From Salpingoeca rosetta (lineage: Eukaryota; Protista; Choanoflagellata), in assembly GCA_033442325.1 (NCBI GenBank), contig JAWQFM010000012.1:1706229-1746577 (forward strand): a stretch of 40,349 nt of DNA, written 5' to 3'. Shown here one piece after another: positions 1 through 31,901 of this stretch; position 1 is the stretch's first letter; each line of letters starts with the position of its first letter. A program made the position numbers and the translations under genes. The notes under the pieces are model-generated. The model was not told where the DNA came from. It did not search any database and saw only the letters and a program-made list of their open reading frames with translations.

Positions 1-515
1 TTGCTGGCGTACAAGGCACGCGTGTGACTGTGACCGGTGAGCGTTTGCTTGGAGGCGGAAGCTCCATTGCTGCTGTACAGGTTGCTGGTGTGGAAACACG
101 TGTGATTGAGTCCAGCAACAACACGCATGTTGTGCTGCGAGCAAGCAACGGCACGGGGAGCGGAGACATTGAGCTGATTGCGGACACGGGCGCGAAGACT
201 GTGGCGAATGTGACGTTCAGCTACCTGGAGCTGGGTGTTATTACTGCAGTGCGCCCGGCTATTGGGCGCGTGGGCACGCTCGTGACGATTGAGGGCGAGC
301 GGCTTCAGAGCGGAGGGAGCGCTGTGGCACGCGTTGACCTGGGTGGTGTTCCTGCAACGCTGCTGCACGGCAATGACAGCACGGTTGTTGTGATTTGCTC
401 TGCAGGCAGCGGTGCTGGTGCGGTGCGCGTGACAAGTGACGTTGGCGGCTTTGTGGAAGGTTTGCTGTGGACATTTGTGGACTCACGCATCGACAGTGTG
501 GAGCCGAGTCAGGGC
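1..515 (+). repeat. Long direct repeat copy 1 (matches 13708-14222)
   Basis: Identical by eye to 13708-14222; offset 13,707 bp = 4,569 codons. Antisense ORFs 305-490 and 14012-14197 are identical. Confidence 0.95.
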
Positions 516-12500: not shown

Positions 12501-14268
12501 GTTGTGGTGCGCGCGGGCTTGCCTGTGGATCCGTTTGTGATGCAAACAGGCCGGGTGGTGGTGATGGGCAGCAGCGGAGCCACCATCACCGCGCTGGACG
12601 CTTTTACGTACAACGTTGCTGGCGACATCACAGACGTGTCGCCGTCGTTTGGCCGGGTTGGCACGCGCGTGCGCCTCTTGGGCAGCAATTTGCTTGGCGG
12701 TGGAACGTCGGCAGAGGTGCGGTTCGGCGGTGTGACAGGCGCTGTCACTGCGGTATCTGAGACTGCCATTGACGTCACTGTGCCTGCTGCGTCTGGGCCC
12801 AGCGGACTCGTGAATGTGAGCATTGTCTCTGATAGCGGATCCCATGTGTTGGAGGTTGCAGGCTTCCGGTACACGGCCCCAGGCAGTGTGGCGGCGGTGG
12901 CGCCTTCCAGCGGCCACGAGGGCACAGTTGTGACGATTTCGGGTGCAAGCCTGCTGGCAGAAGAGGCTGACGCTGCCCGCGTGACGCTTGGCGGCGTGAA
13001 CGCGACTGTGGTGTTCGCCAACGACACGCGTTTGGTCGTGGTGGCTGGTGCTTCCTCGACAGCCGGGCTTGGCGACGTGTTTATCGAGACGGTCGGTGGC
13101 GCGCGTCTGCTGGCAGCCAATGCATGGATGTACGTTGCGCAAGCGACGATTACGGATGTGCAGCCTGGCTCTGGGCAGGTTGGCACGCGGGTGACCATCA
13201 GGGGCACGGGCTTGCGCTGCGGTGGCGCAGCAGTGACGAGCGTGCTTCTGGGCTCTGCAGTGGCGCCCGTTGTCACGGAAGACGACACGACAGTAATTGC
13301 GGAGGCGCCAGCACGTGCGGTTGGTGCATCACCTGTTGACGTGACAGTTGTGGCCGACACGGGTGCATATGTGACCGCCGACGACGCGTGGACGTTTGTG
13401 ACAGCAGGCGCTGTGAGCTCGGTGGTGCCGAGCAGCGGACAGGAAGGCACACGGGTCACGTTGAGCGGAACCAACCTGCTTGGGTCTGGCAGCGGCGTGG
13501 ACCAGGTGCTGCTTGCGGGCGTTTCTGCGACAGTTGTGAGCGCAGCCTCTTCTGAAGTGGTTGTGATTACGTCTGCGCTGCCTGGTGGCGTCGTCGGTCC
13601 TGTGACTGGCAACGTGACGGTTGTGTCGACGTCGGGAGCCTTGGTGCATGCTGACACGGACTCATTTACATACGTGCGGGCGGGCGCAGTGACGGGCGTG
13701 TCGCCGCTTGCTGGCGTACAAGGCACGCGTGTGACTGTGACCGGTGAGCGTTTGCTTGGAGGCGGAAGCTCCATTGCTGCTGTACAGGTTGCTGGTGTGG
13801 AAACACGTGTGATTGAGTCCAGCAACAACACGCATGTTGTGCTGCGAGCAAGCAACGGCACGGGGAGCGGAGACATTGAGCTGATTGCGGACACGGGCGC
13901 GAAGACTGTGGCGAATGTGACGTTCAGCTACCTGGAGCTGGGTGTTATTACTGCAGTGCGCCCGGCTATTGGGCGCGTGGGCACGCTCGTGACGATTGAG
14001 GGCGAGCGGCTTCAGAGCGGAGGGAGCGCTGTGGCACGCGTTGACCTGGGTGGTGTTCCTGCAACGCTGCTGCACGGCAATGACAGCACGGTTGTTGTGA
14101 TTTGCTCTGCAGGCAGCGGTGCTGGTGCGGTGCGCGTGACAAGTGACGTTGGCGGCTTTGTGGAAGGTTTGCTGTGGACATTTGTGGACTCACGCATCGA
14201 CAGTGTGGAGCCGAGTCAGGGCTCAGAAGCGACACGTGTGACGACATCTCCTGCAAGAGGGCTGTTTG
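3..14268 (+). CDS. Giant IPT/TIG (Ig-like) tandem-repeat surface protein, internal fragment (open at window start, truncated by gap)
   Basis: Stop-free frame from base 3 to the N gap. ~54 repeats of ~88 aa counted by hand, consensus (I/V)xxVxPxSGQxGTxVTIxGxxLLGGG...V.L.GV.A...S.ND..VVV...GDV...DTGA...(F/W)xY, the IPT/TIG pattern of plexin/fibrocystin-type proteins; many NxS/T sequons. The HTHT tail in the ORF track is read-through into the gap and microsatellite. Confidence 0.9.
13708..14222 (+). repeat. Long direct repeat copy 2 (matches 1-515)
   Basis: Identity ends at ...ccgagtcagggc; 14223-14268 looks like a degraded read of 516-558 running into the gap. Confidence 0.95.
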
Positions 14269-14368
14269 NNNNNNNNNNNNNNNNNNNNNNNNNNNNNNNN
14301 NNNNNNNNNNNNNNNNNNNNNNNNNNNNNNNNNNNNNNNNNNNNNNNNNNNNNNNNNNNNNNNNNNNN
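14269..14368. other. Assembly gap (100 N, probably unsized)
   Basis: Run of exactly 100 N. Confidence 1.
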
Positions 14369-14476
<108 letters not shown>

Positions 14477-15422
14477 CGCAATATTTCTGTATGTCGTGAG
14501 TCGTACGTACACTTCCAACCCTGATTTCAGTTGTAATGTTCCCTTTTTAATTTTGTGTTGTCGTATTCTACCGTTGTAAATTATGACCCGCTGCATCGAC
14601 CCAAGTGCCTATTTTGCACTCCTGCTCACTCCTACTTGAGAACATGTGGTCGCGTTTTACACCGATGCTGTGCGTTTTTGTCCCATTTGTCCACGTCAGG
14701 TAGGTTACGAAGATTGGCGAAAGGTATCCACATCCGCCACAGCCGCCCCACCCACTCGCCACAAAACACACGCACGCAAGCAAAGCAAAGAACGATCGAG
14801 AATAAATGCTTCGTGTCTGTGGTCGCAAGCAAGCAAGCCAGGCAGAACAAAAAAAAAAGGCAAGCGTCAGGGCGTGGGAAATTTGTTCTCAGGCGCTTCT
14901 TCTGTGTGTGCTGTGCACGCGGGTAAATTATTGTTGCGACGACCCAGCCACCGCCACGCACATTTCCCCCTTGGTTTGCTTTCCTTTTGCTCCTGCCTGC
15001 TTTCTTGCTGCGAGTCGAGGTGAGGCCGACAAAGCAAGAGGCCAGCAAGCAAGCACTGCCACCGCTTGCTTTGCTCGTCAGAGAAGGACACGCGAGCAGT
15101 GGACACGAGCGACACTGCGACCGACAGGCAGAAGGAGGACCCCTTGAACCCTCACCAGCCTTGTGTGAGGCGGCGTTTGAGTGTGGTTGCCAAAACACGG
15201 AGTGCCGAGAGCACTTCAGCAAACACCACGATGATGATGATGAGGACTGAGCAACAGCCTCGTCCTCTTCCTCGTACAAGGAGAAGAAGAAGAACAAGAA
15301 CACGCGCACAGCCCCCTGTTTCCAAGAGGAAGGGGGTGGCACCCACCTGCAGCAACAGCAACAGCAACAGCACCAACGCCAGGAAGACCAGGAGCTTACT
15401 GCTGCGCAACACACCCAAAACA

Positions 15423-16145
15423 ATGAGGCAGACAGCGTGGTTGGTTGGGCTGTCACTGTGTCTCGTCCTGCTGAGCGTGGCTGCAGGCAGCACCTCAACC
15501 AGCAGCATCGGAAGCATTGACAGCAACCACAACCACACAGTGACCGCGCCACCTGCTCCACCAGGGCCGGCTGCCCCCGTTGTTTTGCAAGCGTTCCTCG
15601 ATCGCGAGCAACTTCACGCCGAGAGCAGCAGCCCCGATGCTGCACGCACCGGCACCACATTTGTTGGCACAGATCACGACGCCTTGCACCATGACATGCA
15701 AGGCGACGGCCACCGCCAGCAACAACAACCACAGCAAGGGGCGCACCAGCAATGGGATGCCGAGGACGATGGCAAGCCCCTCCACTTCTCGGACTTTTTC
15801 ACGGTTCACCCGGACCTGTTCTTCGACACGCTGTACCAACAGGAGACGTTTGTCAACACGCGGCCAGGCGGCGCACAGACCCTGTCGCCCAGCCTGCAGG
15901 CCGTGGCAAAGCCTCTCGGCGACATCCAGCGCATCTGCGACGCCTTTGAGAAGCAGCCCAAGAAGAAAGGCGGCATCTTTGTGAGTCGCTGCATGGTGTT
16001 GGTGTGGTTTGTTTGGCGGGCATGCGTTTCTGCTGGGCTGTCCTGGAGTCAAGTACTTTGTTGTTTGTTGCACGAGGAGTGATTTAACCTCTTCATTCTC
16101 ATTACTGTTGACTCACCCCCTTGTTTGATCCATCACCCACCCACC

Positions 16146-16223
<78 letters not shown>

Positions 16224-19200
16224 GATCAAGGATGAAGGTGCCACGAGGCAGGTGACGTCGTGCAAGCAAATGAATGATGAGTTGGACGCTGGAGCAGGCA
16301 TGGTCGTGCGCTTCGAGGATCTCGTGGACTGCCCTGTCAAGGACAACGTGGAGCTGTTGCGGCAGGGCGTGCGCGACGTCTTCGGCACCTACTCCACCGC
16401 GCACGTGTACTACGCCACACAGGACGAGTCACGCGCTCTTCTGCCACACACGGATCCATACGACGTCCTCGTCATCCAGCTCCAGGGCTCGAAGCGCTGG
16501 ACCACATGTGTGCCGGACGCATATGTGAGTGACAGCAACGACGACGACGACGACAGTGCCAACGAGCGCAGCAACGCCAACAGCACGGCGGCCGACCGCC
16601 CGCCCTCCGAGGCAGAGGTGCTCGCCGGCTTCAACGCGGCCCAGCTCGGCCAGCTGCAGGAGATCCGCAGCCAGCGCCAACAGGGATGCACAGGCTATCA
16701 AGACAGCATGCTTCGCGGCATGCGCTGCACCAACTTCACCCTGCGGGAAGGCGACACCATGTACATGCCAAAGGGCATCATCCACTTTGCCCTCACCGAG
16801 GAGCAAGGGTCGTCCCACATCACCATCTCCCTGGAACGCAAGGGCCTCGCCTGGGCCGATGCGCTCATGTACGGCGCCACCGCAGCAGGCAGTGTGCTCC
16901 ACAACCGCCTGTTCCAGACCCGCTTCAAGCAGGCCATGCTCAAGCTGCTTAGCGACTACCGCGGTGTTGAGTTTCTCGAAGCCATGCCCTCGTGGAACCT
17001 TTCCCCGGGCAAGCTGTGCCCACTCGACACCCAGCAGTCACCCTTGCACGACCCAGTCTCGTCTGAGGACCTCCTGCACATGCTTCTCGCGCCCTCAGAT
17101 GCAGCCCCGTATGCGCCCGTCATGGCCGCCGCGGGCCCTCCGCCACACACCACAGACCGAGCTGCCTTTACCGAGCGCTACGATACACTGTGCAGAGCCA
17201 TGACCCCGTTTGTCCATGAAGCGTACCTGGACGCGGGCAACCTGGACGCGTACCTCAACCCGCAGGCCATCATGGCCTTGGTTGACAGCGTGTGCAACGA
17301 CGACACGGCTGAGAGCGTCATCGACAAGCTGTGCGAGGACGGCCGCCTCCCGATTGATGTCACGGCCGCCAAGTTCCGCTCGCAGTCGCAGCAGCAACAA
17401 CGGCAACAGCGGCCGCAACGCCAGCAGCGCCAGCAGCGCCAGCAGCGCGAGGTGCGTGTTGTGTGTGGATGCATGTGAATGTGCGTGTGTGAGTGTGGAT
17501 GCATGTGAATGAGAATGTGAATGTGTGAGCGATTTTGAATGTGTTTTTCAAGGAAGATCACGTGCTCCTCCGTCTTGCATGGACAAGCACCTGTCCTCAT
17601 GATTGTCGCTTCCTGTCTCTTTGTGTTCGACTTTGACAACAGCAATTGCGCCCGCAAAGGCGCCAGCGCGAAGAAGCAGAGCTGTCCCGTGACAAGCGCG
17701 CTGCCGTCGTCACGTACACCTGCTATGGCAGCTGCGACACCGGATGTGATAGGTATGCAAACCATGTGCAAACCATCGAAGTGTCCTTACACGAAACACA
17801 CACACACACGCACATGTGGCCATCGCTCCACACCACACGCCTTGTTTGTTGCGACTCACTCGTGTTTGCATCCATTCCCTCTTCGATTTCTTGACAGTCA
17901 AAGTTGCACACAAAGCTGTGACACCAGCTGCGACAGCGGCTGTGATTCAAGGTTTGATCGGGTTGACATCCGTGTATTTGGACACTTATGTTGTGCATGT
18001 GTGCAGGCAAAAGTTACTGTGTGCCTTGACCCCATACCTTTCGCCTTGCACTGACGCATCCTTGTCACGACACACGCACACATAAACACACACTCAGTTG
18101 CAACCTTTGTGATGACGGATGTGACACGGGGTGTGATTACGGCTGCGACAGCGGCTGCGACTACTACAAGTCAGTTGGCAGTCGCCTGCTCGCTTGGCAC
18201 ATTGTTGGGTGCCTTCGCTGCATCTTAACCTGTGCTCGACCCGTTCTGTGCAACCTCTAGCTCTTCCCTCCCTCACACACACGTATACGCGCACATACAC
18301 ACATACACACACACATGCACGCACGCACACACGCACAACTTACACAGGTGCAACACTGGCTGTGATGACGGTTGTGACACTTGTTACTCCGGCTGTGACT
18401 CATCATGCAATGGTACGCATGGGGCACCAACAGCCTATCGATGCACGTGCTTGTGCCAAAACGCCACAACTCTGAGTTCGGCATTTCCCCACGTAACACG
18501 CACTTGAGATCCTCACGTGCTGTTTGGCTGCTATTGTGCAACATCACACAGGTGGTTGTGACGACTACTGTGATGACTACTGCAACGCTGGCTGCGATTA
18601 CGGGTAAGGAAGCTCGTCTCCATACATTCCAAACACACACACACACACACACACGCTTGTGCAACATGCTGGCGCGAGTCCTGTTTGAGCTTGCACGGCA
18701 ACCCAACACGTGCATGACCTCACACTGTTCACCTGTTGCCGCTCGAATGTTCTTCTGTCCCCTGTTCTTTCTCCTTTGCCGGCTTCTCTTTGCCAGCTGC
18801 GATTATTATTGCGACTCTGGATGCGACTCGTAAGTTCAACATAGACAGGCGTGCGTGGAGCTGTTCGCACGCATCGATGTTGGCCGCTTGCTCGCTTTTT
18901 GTTGTTGTCTTCTCTTCTTCTGTTCCTGTACCTTCTACTGCTGCCCACCGCTCATGAGCTGTCTCACACGTCCGTGACCTTCAGGAGCTGTTCGACGTCC
19001 TGCTCAAGCTGTGATGACAGCTGTGATTCCAGCTGCGTCATTTTTAGCCTTGGATGCGACAGTGAGTGCAGAGCAAATCTCTCTTGTGCTTCCGAGCACC
19101 ATCTGCATATCACACACCGCAAGCGCGTGCTTTTACGCTTGTGATGCCGTTGACTCGTGTGCTTGTGTCGTTAACTCAGCATTCTATCACCAATTGGTTG

Positions 19201-19622
19201 GTTCCATTTGCACCACCATTTACAGGCAGTTGCGACAGCAGCTGTGATTACTGTGTCACCACCTGCGACGACTCCTGCGACACCTCGTGCGACGGAGGCT
19301 GTGGTGCGTTGCTCAAACATGCCACACCATGCATCATTGCCCCAGCCTCCCGTGTTGCACGGCAACGTACAACGGATGGCATTCGTGGTCTAACATTTGG
19401 ACGCATGCGGTGTTTGCCCACATAACTTCAGACGAGGGCTGTGATATCTGCTACAGCGGATGCGACTATGGCTGCGACATCTGCTACGACAGCTGCGATG
19501 ACTGTGCGTTTGTCTTGTGAATTCTTGCTTGCAAATGATAGGCTTGTGAGGTCATTTGCTGGCTTGTCACTGGGAACACGAGCTTGCTACACGGGAGCGC
19601 ACACATCACACACGTTCTCGTT

Positions 19623-19653
<31 letters not shown>

Positions 19654-19657
19654 ACGC

Positions 19658-19743
<86 letters not shown>

Positions 19744-22700
19744 ACGCACACCCACACCCCACATGCACACGCGCGCGCGCTTTCCACTGATGCCTTTGCG
19801 CTTGCCAGATTGCAACGGGAATTGCGACTATGGATGCGACGACTCATGTGCTTGGGTGAGTGATATCGTCAACATGTTCGTCAGTGAGACGACTTTAGCG
19901 CAGTGCCACATGCTTCCTCCTCACTCACATTGTCCTCCGCTCACGATTCCCCGTAAACCCCACATCAACACCGACATTGCTGCAGACATACTGCGACGAC
20001 TACTGTGACGATGGCTGCGGTCAGTTACCACCGACATCCCACCTGGCCTGCCAATGCTTGCAGGCTTGCACATGTCCTGTAAAGTATATTGACTGGCATG
20101 ATGATCGTCTTGTTTTGTGGGTGTGTTGCCAAAATCTCACTCCGTTCAACTCATCCCACCCGATGACCGTGCTCTCGTCGCGTTGTTGACACGCCAACAC
20201 CAACAGACGATTCATGTGGTGAGTGCATGCACCTGCTGAAATGTATTCTCTTCAATCGTGCCCTCTGCTGTTTTTGCTGATGTGCAACAGCCATCACCGC
20301 CTTGCTGACAATTCTTGATTTTCCAATACACAAGCTCACATGCACCAAACTTGCGACGCTCAACTACTCGACTTCCCCTTCTTCCCAACACAGACACTGG
20401 CTGTGACGGCCCATGCGATTCGTAAGATGTGTCGGTCTTGTCTGTTCACTCACATTACATGTTGCTGGCGCGACTTGATGGTCACTGCGACATTGTCCTC
20501 CCCTGCACGATTGATCCATTCACATTCAACACTACTCACTTGTCACAACTCACACTGGTTGTTGTTGGCATCCATGCGTTATTTGCGGTTCATCGTCCTC
20601 AGGGGCTGTGATGACAGCTGCGGTGCGTTCCAACTCCGTTTGCCCTCATTGCGTTGATGGCATTCTACGACAGTACTGTGTCGACCCTATTTGATGTGGC
20701 TCATGCATTGCCTTCGTCTGCTGCACGGCCGCCTTCTCCGCTCACTTTCAATTCATGTTGACGAACCTCCCTTCTTTTCAAATCGCTGTCTGTCATCACA
20801 GATGACTCCTGCGACACGTGCACCCCGATCAGCTGCGACACCGGCTGTGACAGCAGCTGCTACTGCAACCCTNNNNNNNNNNNNNNNNNNNNNNNNNNNN
20901 NNNNNNNNNNNNNNNNNNNNNNNNNNNNNNNNNNNNNNNNNNNNNNNNNNNNNNNNNNNNNNNNNNNNNNNNNNNNNNNNNNNNNNNNNNNNNNNNNNNN
21001 NNNNNNNNNNNNNNNNNNNNNNNNNNNNNNNNNNNNNNNNNNNNNNNNNNNNNNNNNNNNNNNNNNNNNNNNNNNNNNNNNNNNNNNNNNNNNNNNNNNN
21101 NNNNNNNNNNNNNNNNNNNNNNNNNNNNNNNNNNNNNNNNNNNNNNNNNNNNNNNNNNNNNNNNNNNNNNNNNNNNNNNNNNNNNNNNNNNNNNNNNNNN
21201 NNNNNNNNNNNNNNNNNNNNNNNNNNNNNNNNNNNNNNNNNNNNNNNNNNNNNNNNNNNNNNNNNNGGAACAAGCGGCTGCACGTCATGCACCGCTTGTC
21301 CATCTTCCACATACGAGACATCGCCATGCACCTCAACCTCAAACCGAGGGTGCACTCGCTTGACAGTGTGCACGGGCAGCCAGTACGAGAAGACTGCTGC
21401 GACGGCGACGAGCGACCGTGTGTGCCGCGGGCTGACGACGTGCGGTGCTGGGGAGCAGGAGAAGGTGGCGCCGACGGCGAGCAGCGACCGCGTGTGCGAG
21501 GCGTGCCCAGCTGGGACAACGGATGCCAACAGCGACGGCAGCGACGCGTGCGTGACGTGCGGCGGTGGGACGTATGTGCCAGCTGGGTCGACTGGGACTT
21601 GCTCGCAGTACGAGTGCAGCGCGGGCACGGCTGACACGGACAGCAACGCTGGGACGGCGTGCGAGGCGTGCGACGGGACGACGACGTACCAGCCGAGCAA
21701 GGGCCAGGAGCGGTGCCTGAGTGTGAAGACGTGCGGGGCTGGCGAAGAGGAGACGACGTCGCCGAGTGCGACGCGGAACCGGGTGTGTCAGCCGTGCCAG
21801 CTCGGGTCGACGTTCAAGGCGCAGAGCGGACAGAGCACGCGGTGCATTTCTGTGACGACGTGCGGCGCTGGTGAGGAGGAGATTGCTTCGCCGACGCTGT
21901 CCACAGATCGGCAGTGCCGCACGTGTGCCAGTGGGACGTTCAAGGCTGCTGCTGGGCAGAGCACGACATGTATTGCCGTGAGCACGTGTGCTGCTGGCTT
22001 CACGGTACGTCACTGTGTAGTGTGTGTGTGTGTGTTTTGACTGACTGTGTGCATGTGTGTGCATATGTGTGCATATGTGTGCATGTTTGTGAATGAACTT
22101 GGGTTGTACAAGCCGTGCGTGAGTGTGTGCCTGGGTTGTATGTTTGGTTACGATGGCTCACGCGTGGTTGGTGTGATGCGACTGCGATGCAACAATGTGC
22201 TTGTGTGTGCGTGTTTGTGTGTGTGTTTGTAGGAGGATGTTGCTCCGACACCATCGTCTGATCGGGTGTGCGTTGAGTGTGCGCCCGGGACATTTAAGGC
22301 GACTGCTGGCGATGGGACGTGTCGTGCGCACAGGACGTGTGAGGACACCGAGTATGAGACGGTTGCGCCGACGAGCTCGTCTGATCGGAAGTGCAAGGCG
22401 CTGACGGTGTGCCAGGATGACGAGTGGGAGTCCAAGGCACCGACAATAACCACGGACAGAGAGTGCTCTCCTTGCGGCAGGTGTACGGATGGGCTGACAC
22501 TTGACAAGGCATGCACTGATACGTCGCCAACCAAGTGTGTTGGGTGTGACGAGTGTGCGTCCGATGAGTACACGCTTTCGTCATGCACGTTGAGCTCTCA
22601 AACGCAGTGCCGACAGTGCACGACGTGTGGCAACGATGAGTACCAGACGAAGGCTTGCAGCGTGTCGCAGGACACGGAGTGTGCGACGCTGACGACGTGC

Positions 22701-25700
22701 AGCAGCACGCAGTTTGAGGTTGAGGCGCCGACAGCGACGCGTGACCGCCGGTGCAAGGACCTGACGGCGTGCCAGCCTGGGGAGTACGAGTGCACGGCAG
22801 CGACGCTGACGACGGACCGCGAGTGCTGCGGGGTGACGCAGTGTGTGCCGGGCAGCGAGGAGACGTCCGCGCCGACGGCGACGTCTGATCGGGAGTGCCG
22901 GCAGTGTGTTGCGGGCACGACGGATGCTGACGGAAGCGGGACGACGCCCTGTGTTGCGTGCAGTGCCGGGCACTATGTGCCGCGCGGACGCACTGGCGGG
23001 TGTGCGGCGTTTGAGTGCGCGGCGGGCCACGTGGACCAGGACGAGGATGCTGCGACGGCGTGCAAGTTGTGCGAGGCAGGCGTGAACTATGCCGGGAGCG
23101 CTGGGCTGACGAGGTGCACGTCTGTGAGCGAGTGCGGCGCTGGCGAGGAGGAGACGAGCGCGCCGACAGCGTCAACGGACCGGGTGTGCAGCACGTGCGC
23201 GTCTGGCAAGTTCAAGGCGACGACTGGGCAGACGCCGTGCGAGGCTGTGTCGACGTGCGAGGAGGACGAGTACGTGTACCGTGCGGCGACTGTGAGCACG
23301 GACACGCAGTGCCGAGCGCTGACGGCGTGCAGTGATGAGCAGTATGAGACGCGCGCGCCGACAGTGAACAGCGACCGGGAGTGCACGGGGCTGACGACGT
23401 GCGGGAGCGGGGAGTACGAGACGCGTGCGCCGACGGCGACGACGGACCGCAAGTGCGCGAGTGTGACGCAGTGCGACTCGACGCAGTTTGTGGTGTCGAA
23501 GCCGACGGCGACAACGGACCGGGACTGCGCTGAGTGCGACCGGTGCGACAGCGGGACGCAGTATGAGACGGCGACGTGCACGGCGACGACGAACAGGGTG
23601 TGTGCGGACCTGACGGTGTGTGCGGACACGGAGTACGAGTCTGTTGCCGCGACGGACACGAGCGACCGCAAGTGCTCGAGCTGCCGGGAATGCACGTCGT
23701 CTGAGTATCTTGTGTCTGGGTGCAGCGAGAGCGCGAATGCTGTGTGCAAGGCGTGCACTGAGTGCCCAAGCGGGACGTTTGTGTCGACGGCGTGCACGCC
23801 GCTTGCTGATGCCGAGTGCACGGAATGCACGCGGTGCGGGAGCGGGTACTTTGTGCAGTCGCCGTGCACGAGCGAGGCAGACACGACGTGCAAGCGGTGC
23901 CGGTCGTGCGCGAGCGGAGAGTATCTGCACACGGCATGCACGACCCCTTTGCCGATCGCCAATGTGCAACGGTCACACCGTGCTCATATGGGGAGGTTCA
24001 ATTCGCCCCTCCCACCCCCACATCTGATCGGACGTGCGTGACTCCTGATCCTCGCTTGAACGCGACACTGCTCGCTGCAGTTGCGCCGCACGTGCCCGTG
24101 CACGTGACAGTGCAGTCCACGTTTCCGGGCGTTGTTTTGCCGTCCCCCTTTTCATCAGCCGTGTCGTCCCCGTCGTCATACGAGGCCCAGCTGACCGTTG
24201 GCCACACAGGAATGGTATCGGTTCGTGTTGGTGAAGGCTTGGTTGCAAGCGACACTTACACGCTTCCGCTGCGGTCGGCGGCGGCGTTTGCTGCGCGAGT
24301 GCTGAGCGTTGAGCTGACCAGCACGGCGCGCACTGCGAGATTGCTGTACTCTGTACGCGATGACCTTGGAAATGTTGCGTGCTCATCGTCAACAGCAACC
24401 TTTGTGCTGCGGCTTCGCTCCCCCTCCTCCAGTCTGTCTCTGGTCCAAGTGATGAGCGAGTGCACCGCAACGAGCGAGTCGCATGGCGTGTGTGTGGCCG
24501 TGCTCTCCCTTCCCCAAGTGTGGTTTTCGCCTGAATCGCACACGTCGCCCAATGAGGCTATTGTGGATGTTCTTGTCACGAGCGACGCCGTTGTTGCCTC
24601 TGGCGGTGCGGACCTTGACGAGGACGGGTACTCCCAGGTGGGCACGCTGCCGCTGGTTGTGCCAGCCTCATCGGCTTCAGAGGATGTGGAGGATATTCGT
24701 GTGCGTCTGCCAACGCATGCCCTGACGCCGGACCAGCCTGGCGTTGTGAGTGTGTCGAGCTCGTTCGCGTTCACCGCAGAGGTGTTCCGTGTGAAGTGCG
24801 TGTCGAGCCACCCGGATCTTGTTCTGGGCGAGGTGTCGATTGATGACAGCGTGTGGACTTCCCGGGCGTCCAACCTTGACGGGCGGTCGCTGGTTGTTGC
24901 GGGCTTGTTGATGAACGGCCACCGCGTGCCAAACAGCTTTGGCGAGCAGGAGCTCTTCTCGTTTGACGTCGCCCTTGCAGATGGTGTTGACCTGAGCGGT
25001 GGTGCGCCTGGGTTGGCTTCCGCCACCGTGTCTTGCACGACGGAGGAGCTGAGTGACGTGAGTGATGCCGTGCGCATTCCCCGCGGTGCCACATCCTTCC
25101 CGACGAACGTGACAATGAGCGATCGCTTTGGCCAGCACGCCAGTGGCCAGGGTCGTCTGGCTGTGCGCCCAACTGCCACGCGGGCGCTGCTTGCGCACAC
25201 GGAGCGTGCCGTGTTGGTGAACACGGGGCTGCTGACTGGCATCGAGACAAGCACGCAGCTCGTGGTGACCGCATACGATGAGTTTGGTGCCTCGTCCACC
25301 GCCACCCCAACGGAGTGCTCGCTGGACGCTGGTGCTTCGGGCGCCGCCCTGGCAGCGGTGTCTGCGAACTGCGATGCGGTTACGCTGTCTTCTTCGGCCT
25401 CATTGCCCTTTAGCAGCCCCGGCGGACAGGCTGTGGTGACTGTGAGACAAGGCCAGCTTGAGGCCACCACCGTTGTGAGTGTGTACGTGCCAGCGTCTGC
25501 GCCAAGCGTTGCGTTGGATCGCACGAGCCTGCGTGCGTTGGTTCCGCGTGAGGTGTCGCTTGCCTTTGGCGTTCGTGAGCCCTGTGCTGCGGCGACCGTG
25601 TTTGAGCGCACTCGCGTGCACGTTCTGGCCAACTTCACCTGCACAGGCGTGGATGGACAAGCGTGCCTGCCTGCTCTTCCGGGACAGGTGCAACTGGATG

Positions 25701-28700
25701 TGGCACAGCTGGCACTGGAGCTCACGGTTGCGGACGACGACGTTGCTCGCGTGAAAGACACGTACGTGGTTGGCGTTGCAGACGGGACGACCGAGGTGCG
25801 AGTGGAGCAGCCCAACAGCGGCGTTGTTCTGGCCTCCACGCCCGTGCACGTGACACGTGATGAGGTGGTGGAGATTGACGGCCTGTACGCGGGCAGCGCG
25901 GAGTCTGCGACGTTGTCGCTGGACCACGATGCCGTTCACCAGTTGTTTGACCAGGTGCCTGTGCACGTGCGTCTTCAGTCGTCGCCGCTGCGCGCGGAAG
26001 GCGACGTGACGCATGTGTATGCTTTTGTCGTGCTGCGGGATGGCACACAGTTTCCGATTGACGTGCTGGACGGCCTGTACATGGTGCCGCTCGATGCGGG
26101 CCAGCTCGTTCCGGTTGCTCCGGCGACGTTTGCTGTGGCTGCTGGTGCCCGGAACGGAGTTGCCTCCCGTGTTCGCGTGGTCTGGGCCCCGCCCGCACTC
26201 CAGGGCGGCGTGTGCAGCGATGCCGATGGCGGAGTCGCAGGGGGCGGAGGCGCCACAACCCCGGCGCCACCATACACCTACGTGCTCGCCCAGGAGGACG
26301 TGAGTGTGGACTTGCAGCTCCGAAAGCCAACAGGCGTCCGCCTGACGAACACGGCGAGGCGGCTTGTGCTTGAGACAGACCCAGCGGCCAGCGTGGGCGG
26401 CGCGAGCATCCCGACCTCCATGCAGCTGTCGGTGCTTCTTGAGTATTCTGGTGGCGGCAGCGCTCAGGACGTGACCACGGATTCGCGGGTGCACTGGACC
26501 CTGAACAACCAGGACACTGGCGGGGATGTGGTGAGCATTGAGGTGGTGGATGGCAAGCTGGTGCTGAGTGCCACCAAGCCTGGAGACGCCGTGCTTGTGG
26601 TGATGGTGGACACACCAGACAACCCGATTGTGACAATGTTCAGCGTGCACGTGACCAGGTCTGTGGGGCTGACAACAACAAGCACGCCTTACCCGCCATA
26701 CGCCGGCTCCTCGTCAACAAGCAAGGCTGACCTGCGCCGCGTATTTGGGACCACACCACCGTCGTACCAGCAGTTGCAGCTGACAAGCCGCCTGGTGCTT
26801 GAGGATGGCCACGAGGTGCCGCTTCCGCAGGGGAGCGTGGTCTACAGCACAAACGACAAAACATCGACCCACACGGACAGTGGTGGGGCCCAAATCAGCG
26901 TGCCGTCTATTGGAGTGGAGGGCAATGTGGTGAGCGCCGTTGCCTCTGGCGTGTCGGCAGTGGAGTCTTCGTTTGGTGGCTTTGTTGACGACTCGCTGAC
27001 GGTGACGGCCACAGACACGGAGCCCGTGTACGTGACGGCACTTGAGAACGTTCACCTGCTCTCTGGACCAACCCTGCATGGCGAACCAAACACGACGACG
27101 ACACAGGCGATGGTGAGTGCGGTGCTGAGCGATGGCACGCGCCTGGACAACCTGTTCTCAGCGGACGGTGTTGCTGCTGTGCCCGGGTTGGTCACGTGGA
27201 CGGTGGAACCCCCGTCTTTGGCGGTCGCTTCTGCCGTCGAAGTGGATGCAGGCACCGGTGTGATCACCTTGCTGGGCAACCACTACGCACACGTCGTCCT
27301 GACAGCTAGCACCTTGGTGCCCGAGCCCAACAGCACGGCAAGCAGCTCGCTGCTGCCTAACGTGCTTGAGGCCAACACCACGTTTGCGTGCAACGTGGAC
27401 CCTGCGCCAGGGGAGGTGGACCTTGGCTCGCAACTCTCCGTGCCCCTGCCTTCCGTGCACGTGTCCACCATCTCCACCACCAGCGACGGCAACAGCAGCA
27501 GCAGCAGCAGCAGCAGTGGCCTGTTTGATGTTCCTGTGCGCGTCAACATGGGCGAGGCAGCGTCGCTGGGCGCCTTCCACATCATCATTGAGATGAACTC
27601 GTCTGCGCTTGAGTTTGTCAGCGCAACCCCTGCGTTCTCTGGCCACTTTGATGTGGGCGCAACCGGCGATGAGGTCTCGCTGGCCGGGCTGGTTGGCGAC
27701 TCATCTGTGTCGGGACCAGCAGCCCTCGTGGCCACTGTGCGCGTCCGGGCTGTGCGTGCTGGCGTTCATCGCCTGCGTGGGCGGGTGGAGGACCTGTTTG
27801 ACCGGTCGGTGCCACGCGCGCAGCCCGTGGGCGGCAGTCGTCACGGCCGCACGTCGCCGGCCGCTGACGTTGCTGTGGTTGTGTTTGGCAGCCGCTTCCC
27901 AACGGCGGGCAGCGCCAACGCCACGGCGCCACTGCATAACATGGCGCGCCGTGAGGCTGCGTTGAGCTTTGGCGCCTGGCTTGACGAGCCCGCAGGCTCC
28001 GACGTGCACGGCGTGGTTCGCCGCGCTGCCGACTCCACGTCCGGCCTTGTTGGTGCGGATGTGGATGGCGACGGGCGATTCAGCACAGCTGATGCGCTGT
28101 TCACGCTGCAGTACACTGTGGAGCGCGACAACGCCTTCCAAACGGTGGTTGGCGTGCAAATCCAGGCGCTGGTGAACGGCACGCAGCGGCTGCTGGCCAT
28201 GGATGCAAACAAGGATGGCGCAGTGAGCTCTGGCGACGCAGATTACATGCTTGCTGTTGTGAACAGCAAGCGGCGGTTTGTTGAGCTTCCGGTGGTGGAG
28301 GCCCTTGCGACGCAGGGGTGCCAGTACGTCGTGAGCGTCTCTGTTGCGGACCGACTCGGCAACGCGCCTGACCCTGCCAACACGGGTGTGTATGTGCTGC
28401 TTGAGTCCACCAGCACGTCGTTCTCGCGCGCCCTCGTGTCGCGTATTGCGGACCTGCAGCAAGAGGCAGCGGCGCTCGCACAGCTTGCTGCAACGGCCAC
28501 CAATGACACCACCACCACCACAGGTCCCAGCACTAGTGCTAACGCCAACAGCACGACGGCGAGCGGTTTCAGCGGGGCAGGTGCGCCGCATCTCCCCCGC
28601 ACGTGGCTGATGGCGGATCTGAACGCCACGTCGCGCCCAACGCGTGCGGTGCTGTTGCCTCTCGTCCCGCAAGCGGACACGGGGGCCAGCAGCCACGCCA

Positions 28701-29968
28701 CCGTTGCTGTGGGAGGCGCCACATACGTTGGCACGTTCCCTGCACCACTGCTATCGAGCAGCGAGCTGGCGCAGCTGGCGGACGACCCGCACCTTGGTTT
28801 ATCTGTGATTGAAGTGACGCGAACAAACCTGGGCACAACGGCGTACGTGCACACGGGCGCATCTGCAGCCGGCACGCGCACGTTTTCTCCGCTGAGGGTG
28901 ACGGGTCTTGGCGTGGACGGCGGGAGCGCCACGGATGTGGTGCTCACGGTGGGCCCCACCTACGGCTACAACCCAATGCAGTTTGTGAAGGCGGCGATTG
29001 ATGTGCGAAACGCATGCACGCTGTCGTGTGGGGAGGGCGAGTACGGCGACATCGACGCCTGGGTGTGCCGTGCGGTGCGCCCGTGTGACCTTTCCTCAGA
29101 ATACATGGTTGCACCTGAAACCCCGACTTCGAACCGCGTGTGTGAGACGCTGACCGTGTGCCGCCCCAGCAGCAAGTACGAGACGACGGCCGCCACACCG
29201 ACGAGTGACCGTGTGTGCACGCCGCTGACCCGCTGCCACCCAACACAGGAGTTTGTGAGTGTCAACGCAACTGCGACGACCGATCGCGTGTGTGCGCCGC
29301 TGACCACGTGTGACGCCACGCGTGAGTACGAGGTGCGTGCGCCGACCGAGTACACGGACAGGGTGTGCGGCCAAATCACCGCGTGCAACGGCACACAGAG
29401 CGAAGTGGCTGCGCCAACGCCCACCTCGGACCGCCAGTGCCAGCGATTTGAGACACAGAAGTCTGCCTCGGCATCGTCGATGCTGAGTGTGATTGGTCCC
29501 GCGGCGGGTGGTGTTGGCTGTCTGCTGCTGGTGCTGGCGCTGATTGCCTTTGTGCGGCGGCGGCGTTCGCGCACGAGCGTGGATGCGGCTTCAACAACAT
29601 CGCGCGACGTGTTCCTCAAGGTCAACCCGATGTACGATGAGGGCGTGGCGCAGAAACGGCGGGGCCCGGGCGACGACGACATGTTTTATGAGGATCCACA
29701 GACACTGCTTGGGTTTGATGCGTCGCTGTTTGAGGGCGGAATGCACCACGCCAAGAACCCGCTGTACGTTGGCTACGATGAGGAGGGCAATCCCAAGGGC
29801 AAGAAGCAGGCGTTTGCAGATGATGACGACGATGGCCTTGTTGCTGTTCTCGATGAGGACAATGGCTACGTTGACATTGACGACAAGCCCACCACTGCCA
29901 GCAAAGACTACGGTGTGTGCATGTATTGTGAGTGTTGTGTGTTGTGTGTGTTGTGTGTGTGTGTGCAC

Positions 29969-30036
<68 letters not shown>

Positions 30037-31901
30037 ATCTGGACTCGTACATCTGGAAGTCGACTCTGTTGGTTTCACTCACACAACGATGGTGGATTGA
30101 TTATGCTTCTTTCCTGGTCTCAACTCTGACTGTGTGCTTGTGGTTGGCAGATTTGTTTGACCTGTACGCTGAGCCCGAGGCTGTGCTGTCCAAGCGTGCC
30201 TCGCGGCGGTTCAGTGTCTCGTCCATGAATGAGGACACTCCGATCATTCGTACGTTGTGTGGCCACGTGTTGCCTGCTTGCTCTTGTGAACCTGCCTTCG
30301 AATGCGAGTTGGTGTTGTGTGTTGCGTGTAAATGTGTTGTGTGTGTGTGTGTGTGTGCGTGCGTGCGTTGTGGGTTGACACTGGCGAGTGTGATTTGTGT
30401 GCGGCAAGCTCTTACCCAAGTATTCCGCTTCGATCGGATTTTATGTTGTTGTTGCTTGCCTGCAGGCAACCCGCTTTATCAAGGGATCAGCGATGATGAT
30501 GATGACGACGACGACGACGATGCCAGCTTCGGTGAGGAGCGTAGCGTGGCGTTTGAACTGTTGTGACAATTGTGTTCTGGTATGCTTCGGGTGTGCTGTG
30601 TTCCAACTTCACAGTCACTCCGCGTGGATTGTTGTTGACGCATCGTGTAACGCTGTGCTGCCTCGTTTCCTCAGGCTTTGCACCAGGCCCTGAGTACATG
30701 GACGTGGAAGGGACCGACAACAACACAGCTGGTGCGCTCGCTTGCTTGCTTGCTTTGAGCATGCGCGCTCCTGTGATCTATGCTGTCTTTATGGGGTTCC
30801 TTTGACAGTGCTCGCCTTTGTATCTCTTGACTCGCTGCTGACTGACCCCATTCGTGCCTTATCTTCGTCATGCTGCTGTTGTTGTGTTTTGTTTTCTTGG
30901 GGCAGCGCCAGTTGGTGACGAGTACATGGACTTTGATGCTGCACCTTCTGCTGCTGGCCGCGCCAAGAAGTCTCCCAAGAAGGGCGTTACTTACGGTGTG
31001 TGCGTGTGTGTGTGTGTGTGTGCGTGTGTGTGTGCGTGCTTCATTTGAATTGCTGTACCTGACACTTTTTGTTGTGCGTGTACTTGCTTCGAATGCATCA
31101 CCACTTCCGTTCCTCATGAACGGATGCATGTTAATTACCATGCCCAATACGTGTAGACAATCCAGACGCGTTCCCCCATGACCCGACGGACGAGTACATG
31201 GACATGGCTTCGCCTGCAAAGCGTGGCGGTGACTACGCCGCCGTCTACGGTGCGTGCGATTGGTTGCTTGTTCGCTTGCCCATGTGACTGTGCTGCGCTG
31301 TTTCCGTGCACAACACTTGCATGGCGCACGTCTCACTCACCTGCCCTCCCCCGCCCCCTTCATTCTGTGTCACGTGCAGACACCCCGGGTGGTGTCGACG
31401 AGTACATGGACATGAACGCGGCCTCGACGACCCGAGGAAGCGAGTACGCCACCATCTACGGTGAGTGGCTGATGCTCCACATCTTGCTTGACGCGTGCTG
31501 GAAACCTTTTTGCAAGTTGTGCACTACCGTTCCAGTTTGCTTGTGTCGATTGTGTTGCTTATGTCGCTTGTGTCGCTTGTGTTGGTGTGTCAAGCGCTGA
31601 AGAATCTACTTGCCTTGAGTCAACGCTCCCCCAACATTGAGCCTTCATCACATTCACTGGCACCAACACTTGCTGGTTCCCTGCGTTTTGTGTTCTCGTT
31701 TGATGCAGACAACGTGGATGACGGGCAGGCTGAGCAGTACTTTGACATTTGCCCGAACAAGCAGACCAATGATGACGTGTACGCCATGATTTACGGTGAG
31801 CTGCGTGTTAATGAACACTCGTACAGAGCGGGGCAATGCGAAATTCGTGTCACCTCTTCCCTCGCACGCACACACACACACACATACACATACACACACA
31901 C

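What the first reader, a model, noticed from the sequence alone, without database searches (positions are those of the whole stretch)
15423..20872. Secretory-pathway JmjC oxygenase fused through a furin-type site to a (CDxx)n Cys/Asp polymer: candidate self-modifying enzyme-substrate system
Seen: signal peptide, then a JmjC domain with intact HxD...H and Lys ligands, a Gln/Arg linker, RDKR, and ~250 aa of CDxx repeats, visible only after splicing 17 exons. Established: NO66/MINA53/ycfD are intracellular beta-carbon hydroxylases of ribosomal proteins; other 2OG oxygenases beta-hydroxylate Asp/Asn (AspH on EGF domains, FIH); beta-hydroxy-Asp chelates Fe in siderophores; enzyme-precursor fusions exist in eukaryotic RiPPs (borosins, BURP-domain peptides). 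Inference: the JmjC domain modifies the tethered Asp/Tyr/Cys repeat in the ER/Golgi and is then cut off, leaving a modified metal- or ligand-binding tip on the receptor. I know no described protein with this layout.
Basis: partly seen in the sequence, partly recalled or inferred. Interest (0 to 1): 0.92.

Follow-up and report, generated by a model that had tools for sequence, protein, structure and literature searches.

The report
Extracellular JmjC oxygenase with Cys/Asp repeat
A choanoflagellate gene places a normally intracellular iron/2-oxoglutarate oxygenase behind a signal peptide at the tip of a giant membrane receptor, followed by a protease cut site and a 250-residue Cys-Asp repeat; receptor-borne enzymes of this kind were noted by computation in 2010, but the conserved cut site and repeat beside the enzyme were not mentioned there, and they suggest what the enzyme may act on.

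Summary
Sixteen GT-AG exons (15423-20872) join in frame. They encode a signal peptide, a MINA53/NO66-clade JmjC domain with all Fe/2OG residues, a Gln/Arg linker, RDKR, and 252 aa with 62 Cys, mostly C-D-x-x. By homology the gene continues past the N gap into TNFR-type repeats, a transmembrane helix and an NPxY tail.

It is not a one-off. The genome (probably Salpingoeca rosetta) holds 11 paralogs, all with the catalytic motif and downstream Cys micro-exons. Ten show R-x-K/R-R before the repeat; the eleventh has a gap there. Complete transcriptome ORFs from three other choanoflagellates carry the dibasic site, repeat, Sushi/Ig body and transmembrane helix; two of them also span the signal peptide and whole JmjC.

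Iyer et al. 2010 (PMC2938197) described receptor-like Monosiga proteins with extracellular MINA/NO66 JmjC domains. That paper never uses the word furin, and the passages I read name no tetrad repeat; its figure and supplement were not seen.

The conserved JmjC, dibasic site and CD-repeat cassette therefore looks undescribed.

Verdict: new variant of a known kind, moderate interest.

The parts
15423..15980 (+). Exon 1: start codon, signal peptide (15423-15488), low-complexity spacer, first strands of the JmjC module (HFSDFF...)
   Evidence: N-terminal hydrophobic leaders are also present in orthologs P0009 and P0011. In-frame upstream ATGs at 15231 are a caveat.
16225..17451 (+). Exon 2: JmjC (ROX/MINA53-NO66 clade) double-stranded beta-helix, helical C-terminal extension and Gln/Arg linker. 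H-T-D at 16447-16455, Lys at 16492-16494, distal His at 16783-16785.
   Evidence: Pfam JmjC_2 at 60.4 bits. Alignment to MINA53/NO66. Invariant H75, D77, K90, H187, H198 and C95, C155, C168 in 36 relatives. AF2 pLDDT 84.5. Best folds are NO66, MINA53 and YxbC.
17643..17752 (+). Exon 3: end of the Gln/Arg linker, RDKR convertase-type site (17688-17699), AAVVTYTC and the first Cys tetrads
   Evidence: The equivalent R-x-K/R-R + xTVTASYTC is present in 10 of 11 paralogs and in P0002, P0009, P0011 and P0014.
17898..20872 (+). Thirteen micro-exons of 20-78 nt encoding the C-D-x-x repeat: 17898-17951, 18098-18169, 18348-18412, 18552-18603, 18797-18829, 18985-19061, 19226-19303, 19432-19503, 19809-19855, 19986-20019, 20394-20421, 20603-20622, 20802-20872. 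The last runs into the N gap.
   Evidence: In-frame GT-AG chain. The same micro-exon layout is seen when the NCBI-annotated paralog PTSG_11500 is mapped on its locus.
20873..21266 (.). Assembly gap (394 N) inside the gene
   Evidence: The flanks (..CDSSCYCNP | GTSGCTSCTAC..) match the continuous repeat-to-GCC/TNFR transition of orthologs and of the paralog.
21267..24041 (+). TNFR/NGFR-type Cys-rich repeats. Exon 21267-22004, intron, then exon from about 22233.
   Evidence: Pfam TNFR_c6 at E = 4e-20 and 8e-40. Splice sites read.
23816..30566 (+). Rest of the ectodomain (TMEM132-like Ig domain and further TNFR-like repeats), transmembrane helix 29489-29554, cytoplasmic tail with NPMY 29624-29635, NPLY 29756-29767 and NPLY 30468-30479, stop at 30564-30566. 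Two short introns in the tail.
   Evidence: Joining this part to the JmjC part rests on homology with the full-length orthologs P0009 and P0011, not on reads.

Best explanation
The region is the 5' third of one large gene for a type I membrane, receptor-like glycoprotein of a choanoflagellate (probably Salpingoeca rosetta).

Its N-terminus is a conserved three-part cassette:
- a signal peptide and a catalytically intact MINA53/NO66-clade JmjC Fe(II)/2-oxoglutarate oxygenase with family-specific conserved cysteines;
- a flexible linker ending in an R-x-K/R-R proprotein-convertase site;
- a Cys/Asp tetrad (C-D-x-x) domain of about 250 aa that leads into TNFR/GCC-type repeats, a transmembrane helix and an NPxY tail.

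Shown: the gene structure, the family, the intact active site, and the conservation of the cassette in 12 genes of this genome and in other choanoflagellates.

Inferred mechanism:
- The oxygenase folds and works in the ER lumen, where Fe(II), 2OG, ascorbate and O2 serve the collagen prolyl and lysyl hydroxylases and AspH.
- It hydroxylates side chains of the receptor's own Cys-rich ectodomain. The adjacent CD-tetrad domain is the leading candidate, most plausibly at Asp/Asn beta-carbons.
- A furin/kexin-type convertase then separates enzyme and product in the late Golgi. The JmjC would thus behave as an enzymatic pro-domain.
For: Gene model:
- In-frame 16-exon GT-AG model.

JmjC domain:
- JmjC_2 at 60.4 bits.
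- H, D, K and H align to the MINA53/NO66 catalytic residues.
- These residues are invariant in 36 relatives, as are three Cys that suggest disulfides.
- Confident model (pLDDT 84.5) whose nearest solved folds are NO66, MINA53 and YxbC.

Conservation of the cassette:
- 11 paralogs, all with HTDPYDV..K and downstream C[DNT]xxC micro-exons.
- R-x-K/R-R immediately before the repeat in 10 of 11 paralogs, with the eleventh hidden by a gap.
- The same site in orthologs: RQKR, RSRR, RSRR.
- Complete transcriptome ORFs of Hartaetosiga balthica (3090 aa) and Salpingoeca infusionum (3044 aa) run from the signal peptide through JmjC, site and repeat to a TM helix in one reading frame. The Microstomoeca roanoka ORF (2799 aa) starts inside the JmjC domain and carries the site, repeat and TM.
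- The cassette heads different receptor bodies: Sushi/HYR, TNFR/TMEM132, cadherin, tyrosine kinase. That argues that JmjC and the CD module work as a unit.
- 22 of 36 sufficiently long homologs have a CD-rich window after the JmjC.

Cleavage:
- P-domain convertases are encoded in the genome (74 and 73.5 bits).

From established knowledge: the other secretory-pathway 2OG oxygenases act in the ER lumen on co-translocated substrates.
Against: - No direct evidence exists for catalysis, cleavage or any modification of the repeat.
- The repeat has no His or Arg, the residues hydroxylated by NO66, MINA53 and YcfD, and no AspH EGF consensus.
- Some family members (for example the Monosiga RTK P0106) lack the CD module or have only a few tetrads. 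The enzyme therefore does not strictly need it.
- AlphaFold gave no usable model of the repeat (pLDDT 38).
- Splicing and expression of this particular copy are unverified.
- In-frame ATGs 190 nt upstream (15231) could turn the leader into an internal signal-anchor.
- Furin-cleaved ectodomains often stay attached to the rest of the protein, so 'cut off' does not follow from a site.
Confidence: 0.4

Rival explanations
1. Cell-surface enzyme or sensor acting in trans, as proposed by Iyer et al. 2010. The JmjC stays on the receptor outside the cell. It hydroxylates other surface or matrix proteins, or reports O2, redox state, Fe or 2OG to the cytoplasm through the tail. The CD-tetrad domain is only a rigid disulfide/Ca2+ stalk.
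For: This is the published proposal for the Monosiga members. Some relatives carry cytoplasmic tyrosine kinases (P0096; P0106 is named a receptor tyrosine kinase). This gene has three NPxY-type motifs in its tail. Some members lack the CD module. The active site is invariant.
Against: Free Fe(II) and 2OG are scarce in oxic water outside the cell (established chemistry, not tested here). A conserved convertase site between the head and the membrane-anchored part would uncouple a sensor unless the two halves stay bound. The tight adjacency of JmjC and CD module across unrelated receptor bodies is left unexplained.
Confidence: 0.3
2. Non-catalytic or chaperone-like pro-domain. The cupin fold is kept as a folding or quality-control aid, or as a ligand-binding head, for the extremely Cys-rich region. 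It is removed by the convertase, and no hydroxylation takes place.
For: The conserved dibasic site. The very high Cys load directly downstream. From my own knowledge: furin-cleaved pro-domains that assist disulfide-dependent assembly exist (the von Willebrand factor propeptide).
Against: Invariance of all Fe- and 2OG-binding residues in 36 diverged relatives is hard to explain without catalysis.
Confidence: 0.15
3. Annotation artefact. The JmjC exons and the Cys micro-exons / receptor belong to separate genes, or the micro-exons are a non-coding minisatellite.
For: No reads were laid on this copy. An N gap interrupts the gene. No run on record as RNA was shown to hold the stretch.
Against: Frame and tetrad register are kept over 15 canonical introns. 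The same structure is found in 11 paralogs and in the annotated paralog. Contiguous complete ORFs exist in the transcriptomes of three other species.
Confidence: 0.04

Closest known systems
Receptor-like Monosiga brevicollis proteins with extracellular MINA/NO66-clade JOR/JmjC domains (Iyer, Abhiman, de Souza, Aravind 2010, NAR 38:5261, PMC2938197)
   Same: Same JmjC clade, at the N-terminus of large proteins with Cys-rich (GCC2/3), Sushi or Ig domains and a TM helix. Monosiga members (P0025, P0030, P0036, P0084, P0106) are direct hits of this exon. Several have a short dibasic + CD-rich stretch after the JmjC.
   Different: The paper does not use the word furin (0 occurrences), and the passages I read name no tetrad Cys/Asp domain. 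It lists only unnamed 'Monosiga-specific domains', some with cysteines; its figure and supplement were not seen. Here the CD module is expanded to 62 or more Cys. The body is TNFR_c6 + TMEM132-like, and the tail has NPxY motifs rather than SH2 or kinase domains.
Ribosomal oxygenases MINA53 (RIOX2), NO66 (RIOX1), bacterial YcfD and YxbC
   Same: Pfam JmjC_2. HxD..H triad, 2OG-binding Lys at +15, HxT in strand 8. Nearest solved folds.
   Different: Those proteins are nuclear or cytoplasmic and hydroxylate His or Arg of ribosomal proteins. This one has a signal peptide, conserved Cys and N-glycosylation sequons, and lies in an ectodomain. Only about 217 of 395 residues superpose (TM 0.35), and the C-terminal helical part differs.
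JMJD8 (ER-luminal JmjC protein, PMC5684140)
   Same: A JmjC domain behind a signal peptide in the secretory pathway (title and abstract).
   Different: Not compared here by sequence or fold. To my knowledge JMJD8 is not of the MINA/NO66 clade, is a small protein with only a JmjC domain, and has no known substrate, tethered repeat or convertase site.
AspH (ER aspartyl/asparaginyl beta-hydroxylase acting on EGF domains) and FIH
   Same: 2OG oxygenases that beta-hydroxylate Asp/Asn. AspH acts in the ER on disulfide-rich modules (established knowledge).
   Different: AspH is not a JmjC protein, and its EGF consensus C-x-[DN]-x4-[YF]-x-C is absent from the repeat here and in five relatives.
Enzyme-precursor fusions (borosin-type autocatalytic RiPP precursors) and enzymatic pro-domains removed by furin (von Willebrand factor propeptide)
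   Same: Catalyst and putative substrate in one polypeptide, with a protease site between them (layout only).
   Different: No modification or cleavage has been shown here. The 'product' would be a receptor domain, not a released peptide. This comparison comes from memory, not from a tool.

Membership tests
MINA53/NO66 (ROX) clade of JmjC 2OG oxygenases, Pfam JmjC_2 PF08007 | Profile match above the curated cut-off | tested here: met
   60.4 bits against a cut-off of 22, E = 1.6e-16
MINA53/NO66 (ROX) clade of JmjC 2OG oxygenases, Pfam JmjC_2 PF08007 | HxD...H iron triad and the 2OG-binding Lys 15 residues after the first His | tested here: met
   Aligned to MINA53 H179, D181, K194, H240. Invariant in 36 relatives.
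MINA53/NO66 (ROX) clade of JmjC 2OG oxygenases, Pfam JmjC_2 PF08007 | [quoted passage not shown] 2010, Table 1) | tested here: met
   H198 invariant and T200 nearly invariant. Helices 210-394 in the model.
MINA53/NO66 (ROX) clade of JmjC 2OG oxygenases, Pfam JmjC_2 PF08007 | Double-stranded beta-helix fold closest to the ROX structures | tested here: met
   The first 32 Foldseek hits are NO66, MINA53 or YxbC, E about 1e-8, probability 1.00, but TM is only 0.35 over about 217 residues.
MINA53/NO66 (ROX) clade of JmjC 2OG oxygenases, Pfam JmjC_2 PF08007 | Intracellular location and ribosomal-protein His/Arg hydroxylation | tested here: not met
   Location: an N-terminal signal peptide and an ectodomain context. 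Activity is not testable here. It is a clade member by sequence and fold, but not a 'ribosomal oxygenase' by biology.
Choanoflagellate receptor-like proteins with extracellular MINA/NO66 JmjC (Iyer et al. 2010) | JmjC N-terminal to Cys-rich extracellular repeats and a TM helix in one protein | tested here: met
   Shown directly in orthologs P0009 and P0011. For the window it is inferred across the N gap.
Choanoflagellate receptor-like proteins with extracellular MINA/NO66 JmjC (Iyer et al. 2010) | Intracellular SH2 or tyrosine kinase domain | tested here: not met
   No kinase or SH2 hit in 23816-30100. The tail carries NPxY motifs instead. The feature is not universal in that family.
Proprotein-convertase (furin/kexin) substrates | R-x-K/R-R motif in an exposed segment, conserved among relatives | tested here: met
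   RDKR at 17688-17699 in a Gln/Arg linker. RQKR, RVRR, RRRR, RSRR or RTRR in 10 of 11 paralogs and in orthologs.
Proprotein-convertase (furin/kexin) substrates | A convertase in the same organism, and actual cleavage | tested here: inconclusive
   The P_proprotein domain is present in the genome. Cleavage is not testable with these tools.
Autocatalytic enzyme-substrate fusions (borosin-like logic) | The enzyme modifies the peptide tethered to it | not testable with these tools
   The layout is compatible, but no data bear on modification.
AspH-type substrates | EGF consensus C-x-[DN]-x4-[YF]-x-C | tested here: not met
   No match in the window's repeat or in P0002, P0009, P0011, P0014 and P0037.

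The most novel reading that the evidence does not exclude
A self-hydroxylating receptor. The N-terminal JmjC is an enzymatic pro-domain that converts the adjacent (C-D-x-x)n domain into a poly-(beta-hydroxy-Asp/Asn), disulfide-laced metal-binding (Ca/Fe) or ligand-binding tip. A furin-type convertase then removes it. This would be the first assigned substrate of an extracellular JmjC, a new residue specificity for the MINA/NO66 clade, and a RiPP-like enzyme-substrate fusion built into receptors of the closest relatives of animals.
Probability: 0.2. Interest if true: 0.85.

Novelty: new variant of a known kind. Interest (0 to 1): 0.5.

Why it matters
All experimentally characterised MINA53/NO66-type oxygenases work inside the cell on ribosomal proteins. 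The choanoflagellate receptor-borne versions have been known from sequence since 2010, but I found no paper assigning them a substrate or function.

The enzyme is almost always followed by a conserved convertase site and a peculiar Cys/Asp tetrad domain, whatever receptor body comes after. That turns a vague 'modifies surface proteins' idea into a concrete, cheap test: express the cassette with and without the HxD motif and look for +16 Da and for cleavage.

It also defines a Cys-rich domain with no Pfam match in the ectodomains of the closest living relatives of animals. S. rosetta is, to my knowledge, genetically tractable.

Tried and rejected
Local scripts translated the whole model.
- The look-up of sequencing runs was inconclusive for expression. 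Runs X1-X3 hold exons and introns alike (0.82-0.98), so they are probably DNA. Runs X5, X6 and X8 hold about twice the share on exon 2 that they hold on the whole stretch.
- AlphaFold2 on the repeat domain (alignment A2, 10 sequences) gave pLDDT 38 and no fold.
- ESM Atlas look-alikes of the repeat gave only generic Cys-rich families (Ephrin_rec_like, TNFR) at 0.78, below the useful range.
- Complex prediction of the JmjC with a 101-aa repeat segment plus Fe gave no verdict (score 0.01). This is not evidence either way.
- Pfam gives no family for the repeat.
- The search for homologous proteins did not return the window's own protein, and the region search with P0009 found only itself and P0025.
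- The search of earlier findings returned nothing for this place or these words.
- Literature searches for choanoflagellate + JmjC + signal peptide, and for Monosiga + JmjC + receptor tyrosine kinase, returned nothing beyond Iyer et al. 2010.
- Rejected: the micro-exons as a non-coding minisatellite (see the fourth rival explanation).
Full report
**1. What is in the sequence**

The window is GC-rich eukaryotic DNA with (CA)n-rich short introns. On the + strand an ATG at 15423 opens a typical signal peptide.

Taking the nearest strong splice sites gives 16 exons up to the assembly gap at 20873:
- 15423-15980
- 16225-17451
- 17643-17752
- thirteen micro-exons of 20-78 nt between 17898 and 20872.

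All 15 introns are GT..CAG and 128-374 nt long. The chain has no stop codon, and the 4-residue Cys register continues across the junctions.

After RDKR (17688-17699) there are 252 residues with 62 Cys and 57 Asp. 48 of 61 Cys-Cys spacings are exactly 3, and Asp follows Cys 44 times. Positions 3 and 4 of the tetrad are mostly Ser/Asp/Thr and Gly/Ser. The opposite strand gives almost no such runs.

**2. The enzyme**

- Exon 2 matches Pfam JmjC_2 (PF08007) at 60.4 bits against a cut-off of 22.
- Against solved structures it aligns to MINA53 and NO66. Its H-T-D, the Lys 15 residues later and the distal His fall on MINA53 H179, D181, K194 and H240.
- In an alignment of 36 relatives these residues are invariant: H75, D77, K90, H187, and the strand-8 His H198. 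T200 of the strand-8 motif is nearly invariant.
- Three cysteines (C95, C155, C168) are also invariant, and further Cys are conserved in the C-terminal helical part. This suggests disulfides in a lumenal or extracellular protein.
- An AlphaFold2 model built from that alignment is confident (mean pLDDT 84.5, pTM 0.81).
- The first 32 Foldseek hits in the PDB are NO66, MINA53 or B. subtilis YxbC; YcfD-type chains follow from rank 39. Only the core of about 217 residues superposes, at TM about 0.35.

By sequence and fold the domain is therefore a member of the MINA/NO66 clade with a complete active site.

**3. The gene continues into a receptor**

Beyond the N gap (20873-21266) the same strand encodes, in order:
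- TNFR_c6 repeats (E = 4e-20 and 8e-40);
- a TMEM132-like Ig domain;
- more Cys-rich repeats;
- a transmembrane helix (29489-29554);
- a tail with NPMY, NPLY and NPLY, ending at 30566.

The two edges of the gap read ..CDSSCYCNP and GTSGCTSCTAC... This is the same transition from the tetrad repeat into the first GCC/TNFR-like unit that is continuous in the orthologs and in the annotated paralog. I therefore read 15423 to 30566 as one gene. That reading rests on homology, not on reads.

**4. It is a family, in this genome and elsewhere**

The assembly is 55.4 Mb in 68 contigs. One paralog is identical to the NCBI protein PTSG_11500 of Salpingoeca rosetta, so the organism is probably S. rosetta.

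A six-frame search finds 11 further JmjC exons at 50-70% identity.
- All 11 have HTDPYDV..K, and all have C[DNT]xxC micro-exons 1-4 kb downstream.
- Ten of the 11 show R-x-K/R-R followed by xTVTASYTC and the first tetrads. The eleventh has an N gap at that spot.
- PTSG_11500 maps onto its locus exon by exon with the same micro-exon design. Its last repeat exon runs straight into the GCC-type repeats.

A profile-free HMMER search of 1.8 billion representatives gives 1212 hits. Many are long proteins with the JmjC near the N-terminus.

TransDecoder 'type:complete' ORFs from transcriptomes carry the same layout:
- Hartaetosiga balthica (3090 aa) and Salpingoeca infusionum (3044 aa) read signal peptide, JmjC, RQKR or RSRR, a Cys tetrad domain (51 Cys each), GCC-like repeats, Sushi, HYR-like and Ig-like domains, TM and an acidic tail with NPxY.
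- Microstomoeca roanoka (2799 aa) starts inside the JmjC domain, so it has no signal peptide or HxD motif, but it carries RSRR, a 51-Cys tetrad domain, Sushi, HYR-like and Ig-like domains and a TM helix.

These are mRNA-level evidence, in relatives, that the dibasic site, repeat and receptor lie on one transcript; two of them extend this to the signal peptide and whole JmjC.

The cassette also heads other receptor bodies:
- a cadherin-containing protein (P0062);
- a complete receptor tyrosine kinase labelled Sexangularia sp. (P0096).

Among 36 homologs long enough to judge, 22 have a CD-rich window after the JmjC. Several Monosiga proteins have short versions with RSRR or KRR before them. A few, such as the Monosiga RTK P0106, have none.

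**5. The repeat is a domain, not a free polymer**

In the four orthologs H. balthica, S. infusionum, M. roanoka and an unnamed Logan contig, it has 51-53 Cys in 217-231 aa. The sequences align with conserved landmarks: a Y-T-C start, a hydrophobic F/L-W insert before SCDSSCDSSC, and CDGPC near the end.

- It has no Pfam family.
- It has no His or Arg, and no AspH-type EGF consensus.
- AlphaFold2 could not fold it (pLDDT 38).
- Atlas look-alikes were only generic Cys-rich families below the useful score.

**6. Prior knowledge**

Iyer, Abhiman, de Souza and Aravind (2010, PMC2938197) state the following. [quoted passage not shown] The authors propose that the proteins hydroxylate cell-surface proteins or sense redox conditions.

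The paper never uses the word furin (0 occurrences), and the passages I read name no tetrad Cys/Asp domain. It mentions unnamed Monosiga-specific domains, some with cysteines. I could not see its figure or its supplement.

JMJD8 is an ER-luminal JmjC protein with a signal peptide, by the title and abstract of PMC5684140.

What seems new is the conserved three-part cassette and its great expansion in the S. rosetta group. My other literature searches found nothing more. Subscription-only papers are not covered by these searches.

**7. How it probably works**

Shown:
- an intact oxygenase active site;
- a secretory leader;
- a conserved dibasic site in a flexible linker;
- P-domain convertases in the genome (74 and 73.5 bits);
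- strict adjacency of the JmjC and the CD module on unrelated receptor bodies.

Inferred:
- Fe(II), 2OG and ascorbate are available in the ER lumen, where prolyl and lysyl hydroxylases and AspH work, and are scarce in oxic water. Catalysis during biosynthesis is therefore more likely than catalysis at the cell surface.
- The nearest and most constant neighbour, the CD module, or more broadly the protein's own Cys-rich ectodomain, is the best substrate candidate.
- The convertase then separates head and body.

I put this at about 0.4.

The trans-acting surface enzyme or sensor of Iyer et al. remains a serious rival (0.3). A non-catalytic pro-domain is less likely because the catalytic residues are invariant (0.15). 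A gene-model artefact is nearly excluded (0.04).

Against the leading idea:
- the known specificities of the clade (His, Arg) have no target in the repeat;
- some members lack the repeat;
- nothing here measures chemistry.

The docking job gave no verdict, and I do not count it either way.

**8. Limits**

- Expression and splicing of this copy are thus unverified. The run index was inconclusive.
- In-frame ATGs at 15231 could lengthen the N-terminus.
- The gap hides the end of the repeat.

**9. Verdict**

This is a new variant of a known kind, with interest about 0.5.

Noticed in passing
window 24-14579 (+), with 30-529 and 13737-14236: A giant open frame of more than 4800 aa made of IPT/TIG repeats (Pfam TIG, 16 stretches in the first 1659 aa). 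Its first 500 nt recur at 13737 with 493/500 identity, just before an N gap (14269-14368). This is either a very long-period tandem repeat or an assembly problem.
   Followed up: partly
window about 23935-23960: Two overlapping open frames (22266-24041 and 23816-30100) both read TNFR-like repeats, and the motif continues only if the frame shifts by one base near ACGACCCC. This is a probable sequencing error or an unrecognised tiny intron inside the receptor gene.
   Followed up: partly
window 15231-15242: Four in-frame ATG codons lie 190 nt upstream of the signal-peptide ATG, followed by a very basic stretch. If they were used, the hydrophobic leader would become internal.
   Followed up: no
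window 37658-40322 (-): Two overlapping minus-strand open frames (400 and 551 aa) whose translations read by eye like a Ty3/gypsy-type retrotransposon pol (reverse-transcriptase-, RNase H-, integrase- and chromodomain-like stretches). No family search was run. Observed only.
   Followed up: no
P0096 (MMETSP transcript labelled Sexangularia sp. CB-2014): A complete 1353-aa ORF with JmjC_2, a CD-rich Cys region (38 Cys), a TM helix and a tyrosine kinase domain. Either the cassette reaches beyond choanoflagellates, or that transcriptome contains a choanoflagellate-like contaminant.
   Followed up: partly
G000 contig C29 (loci L010, L015, L019), C6 (L009, L011), C21 (L012, L014): Several paralogs of the JmjC-repeat gene lie in pairs or triplets on the same contig within about 55-490 kb (C29: 541, 559 and 593 kb). 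This suggests local duplication.
   Followed up: no
window 29624-30479 and the tails of P0009 and P0011: NPxY-type motifs (NPMY, NPLY, NPLY here; NPLY in H. balthica; NPTY in S. infusionum) are conserved in the cytoplasmic tails. This hints at endocytic or PTB-domain coupling.
   Followed up: no
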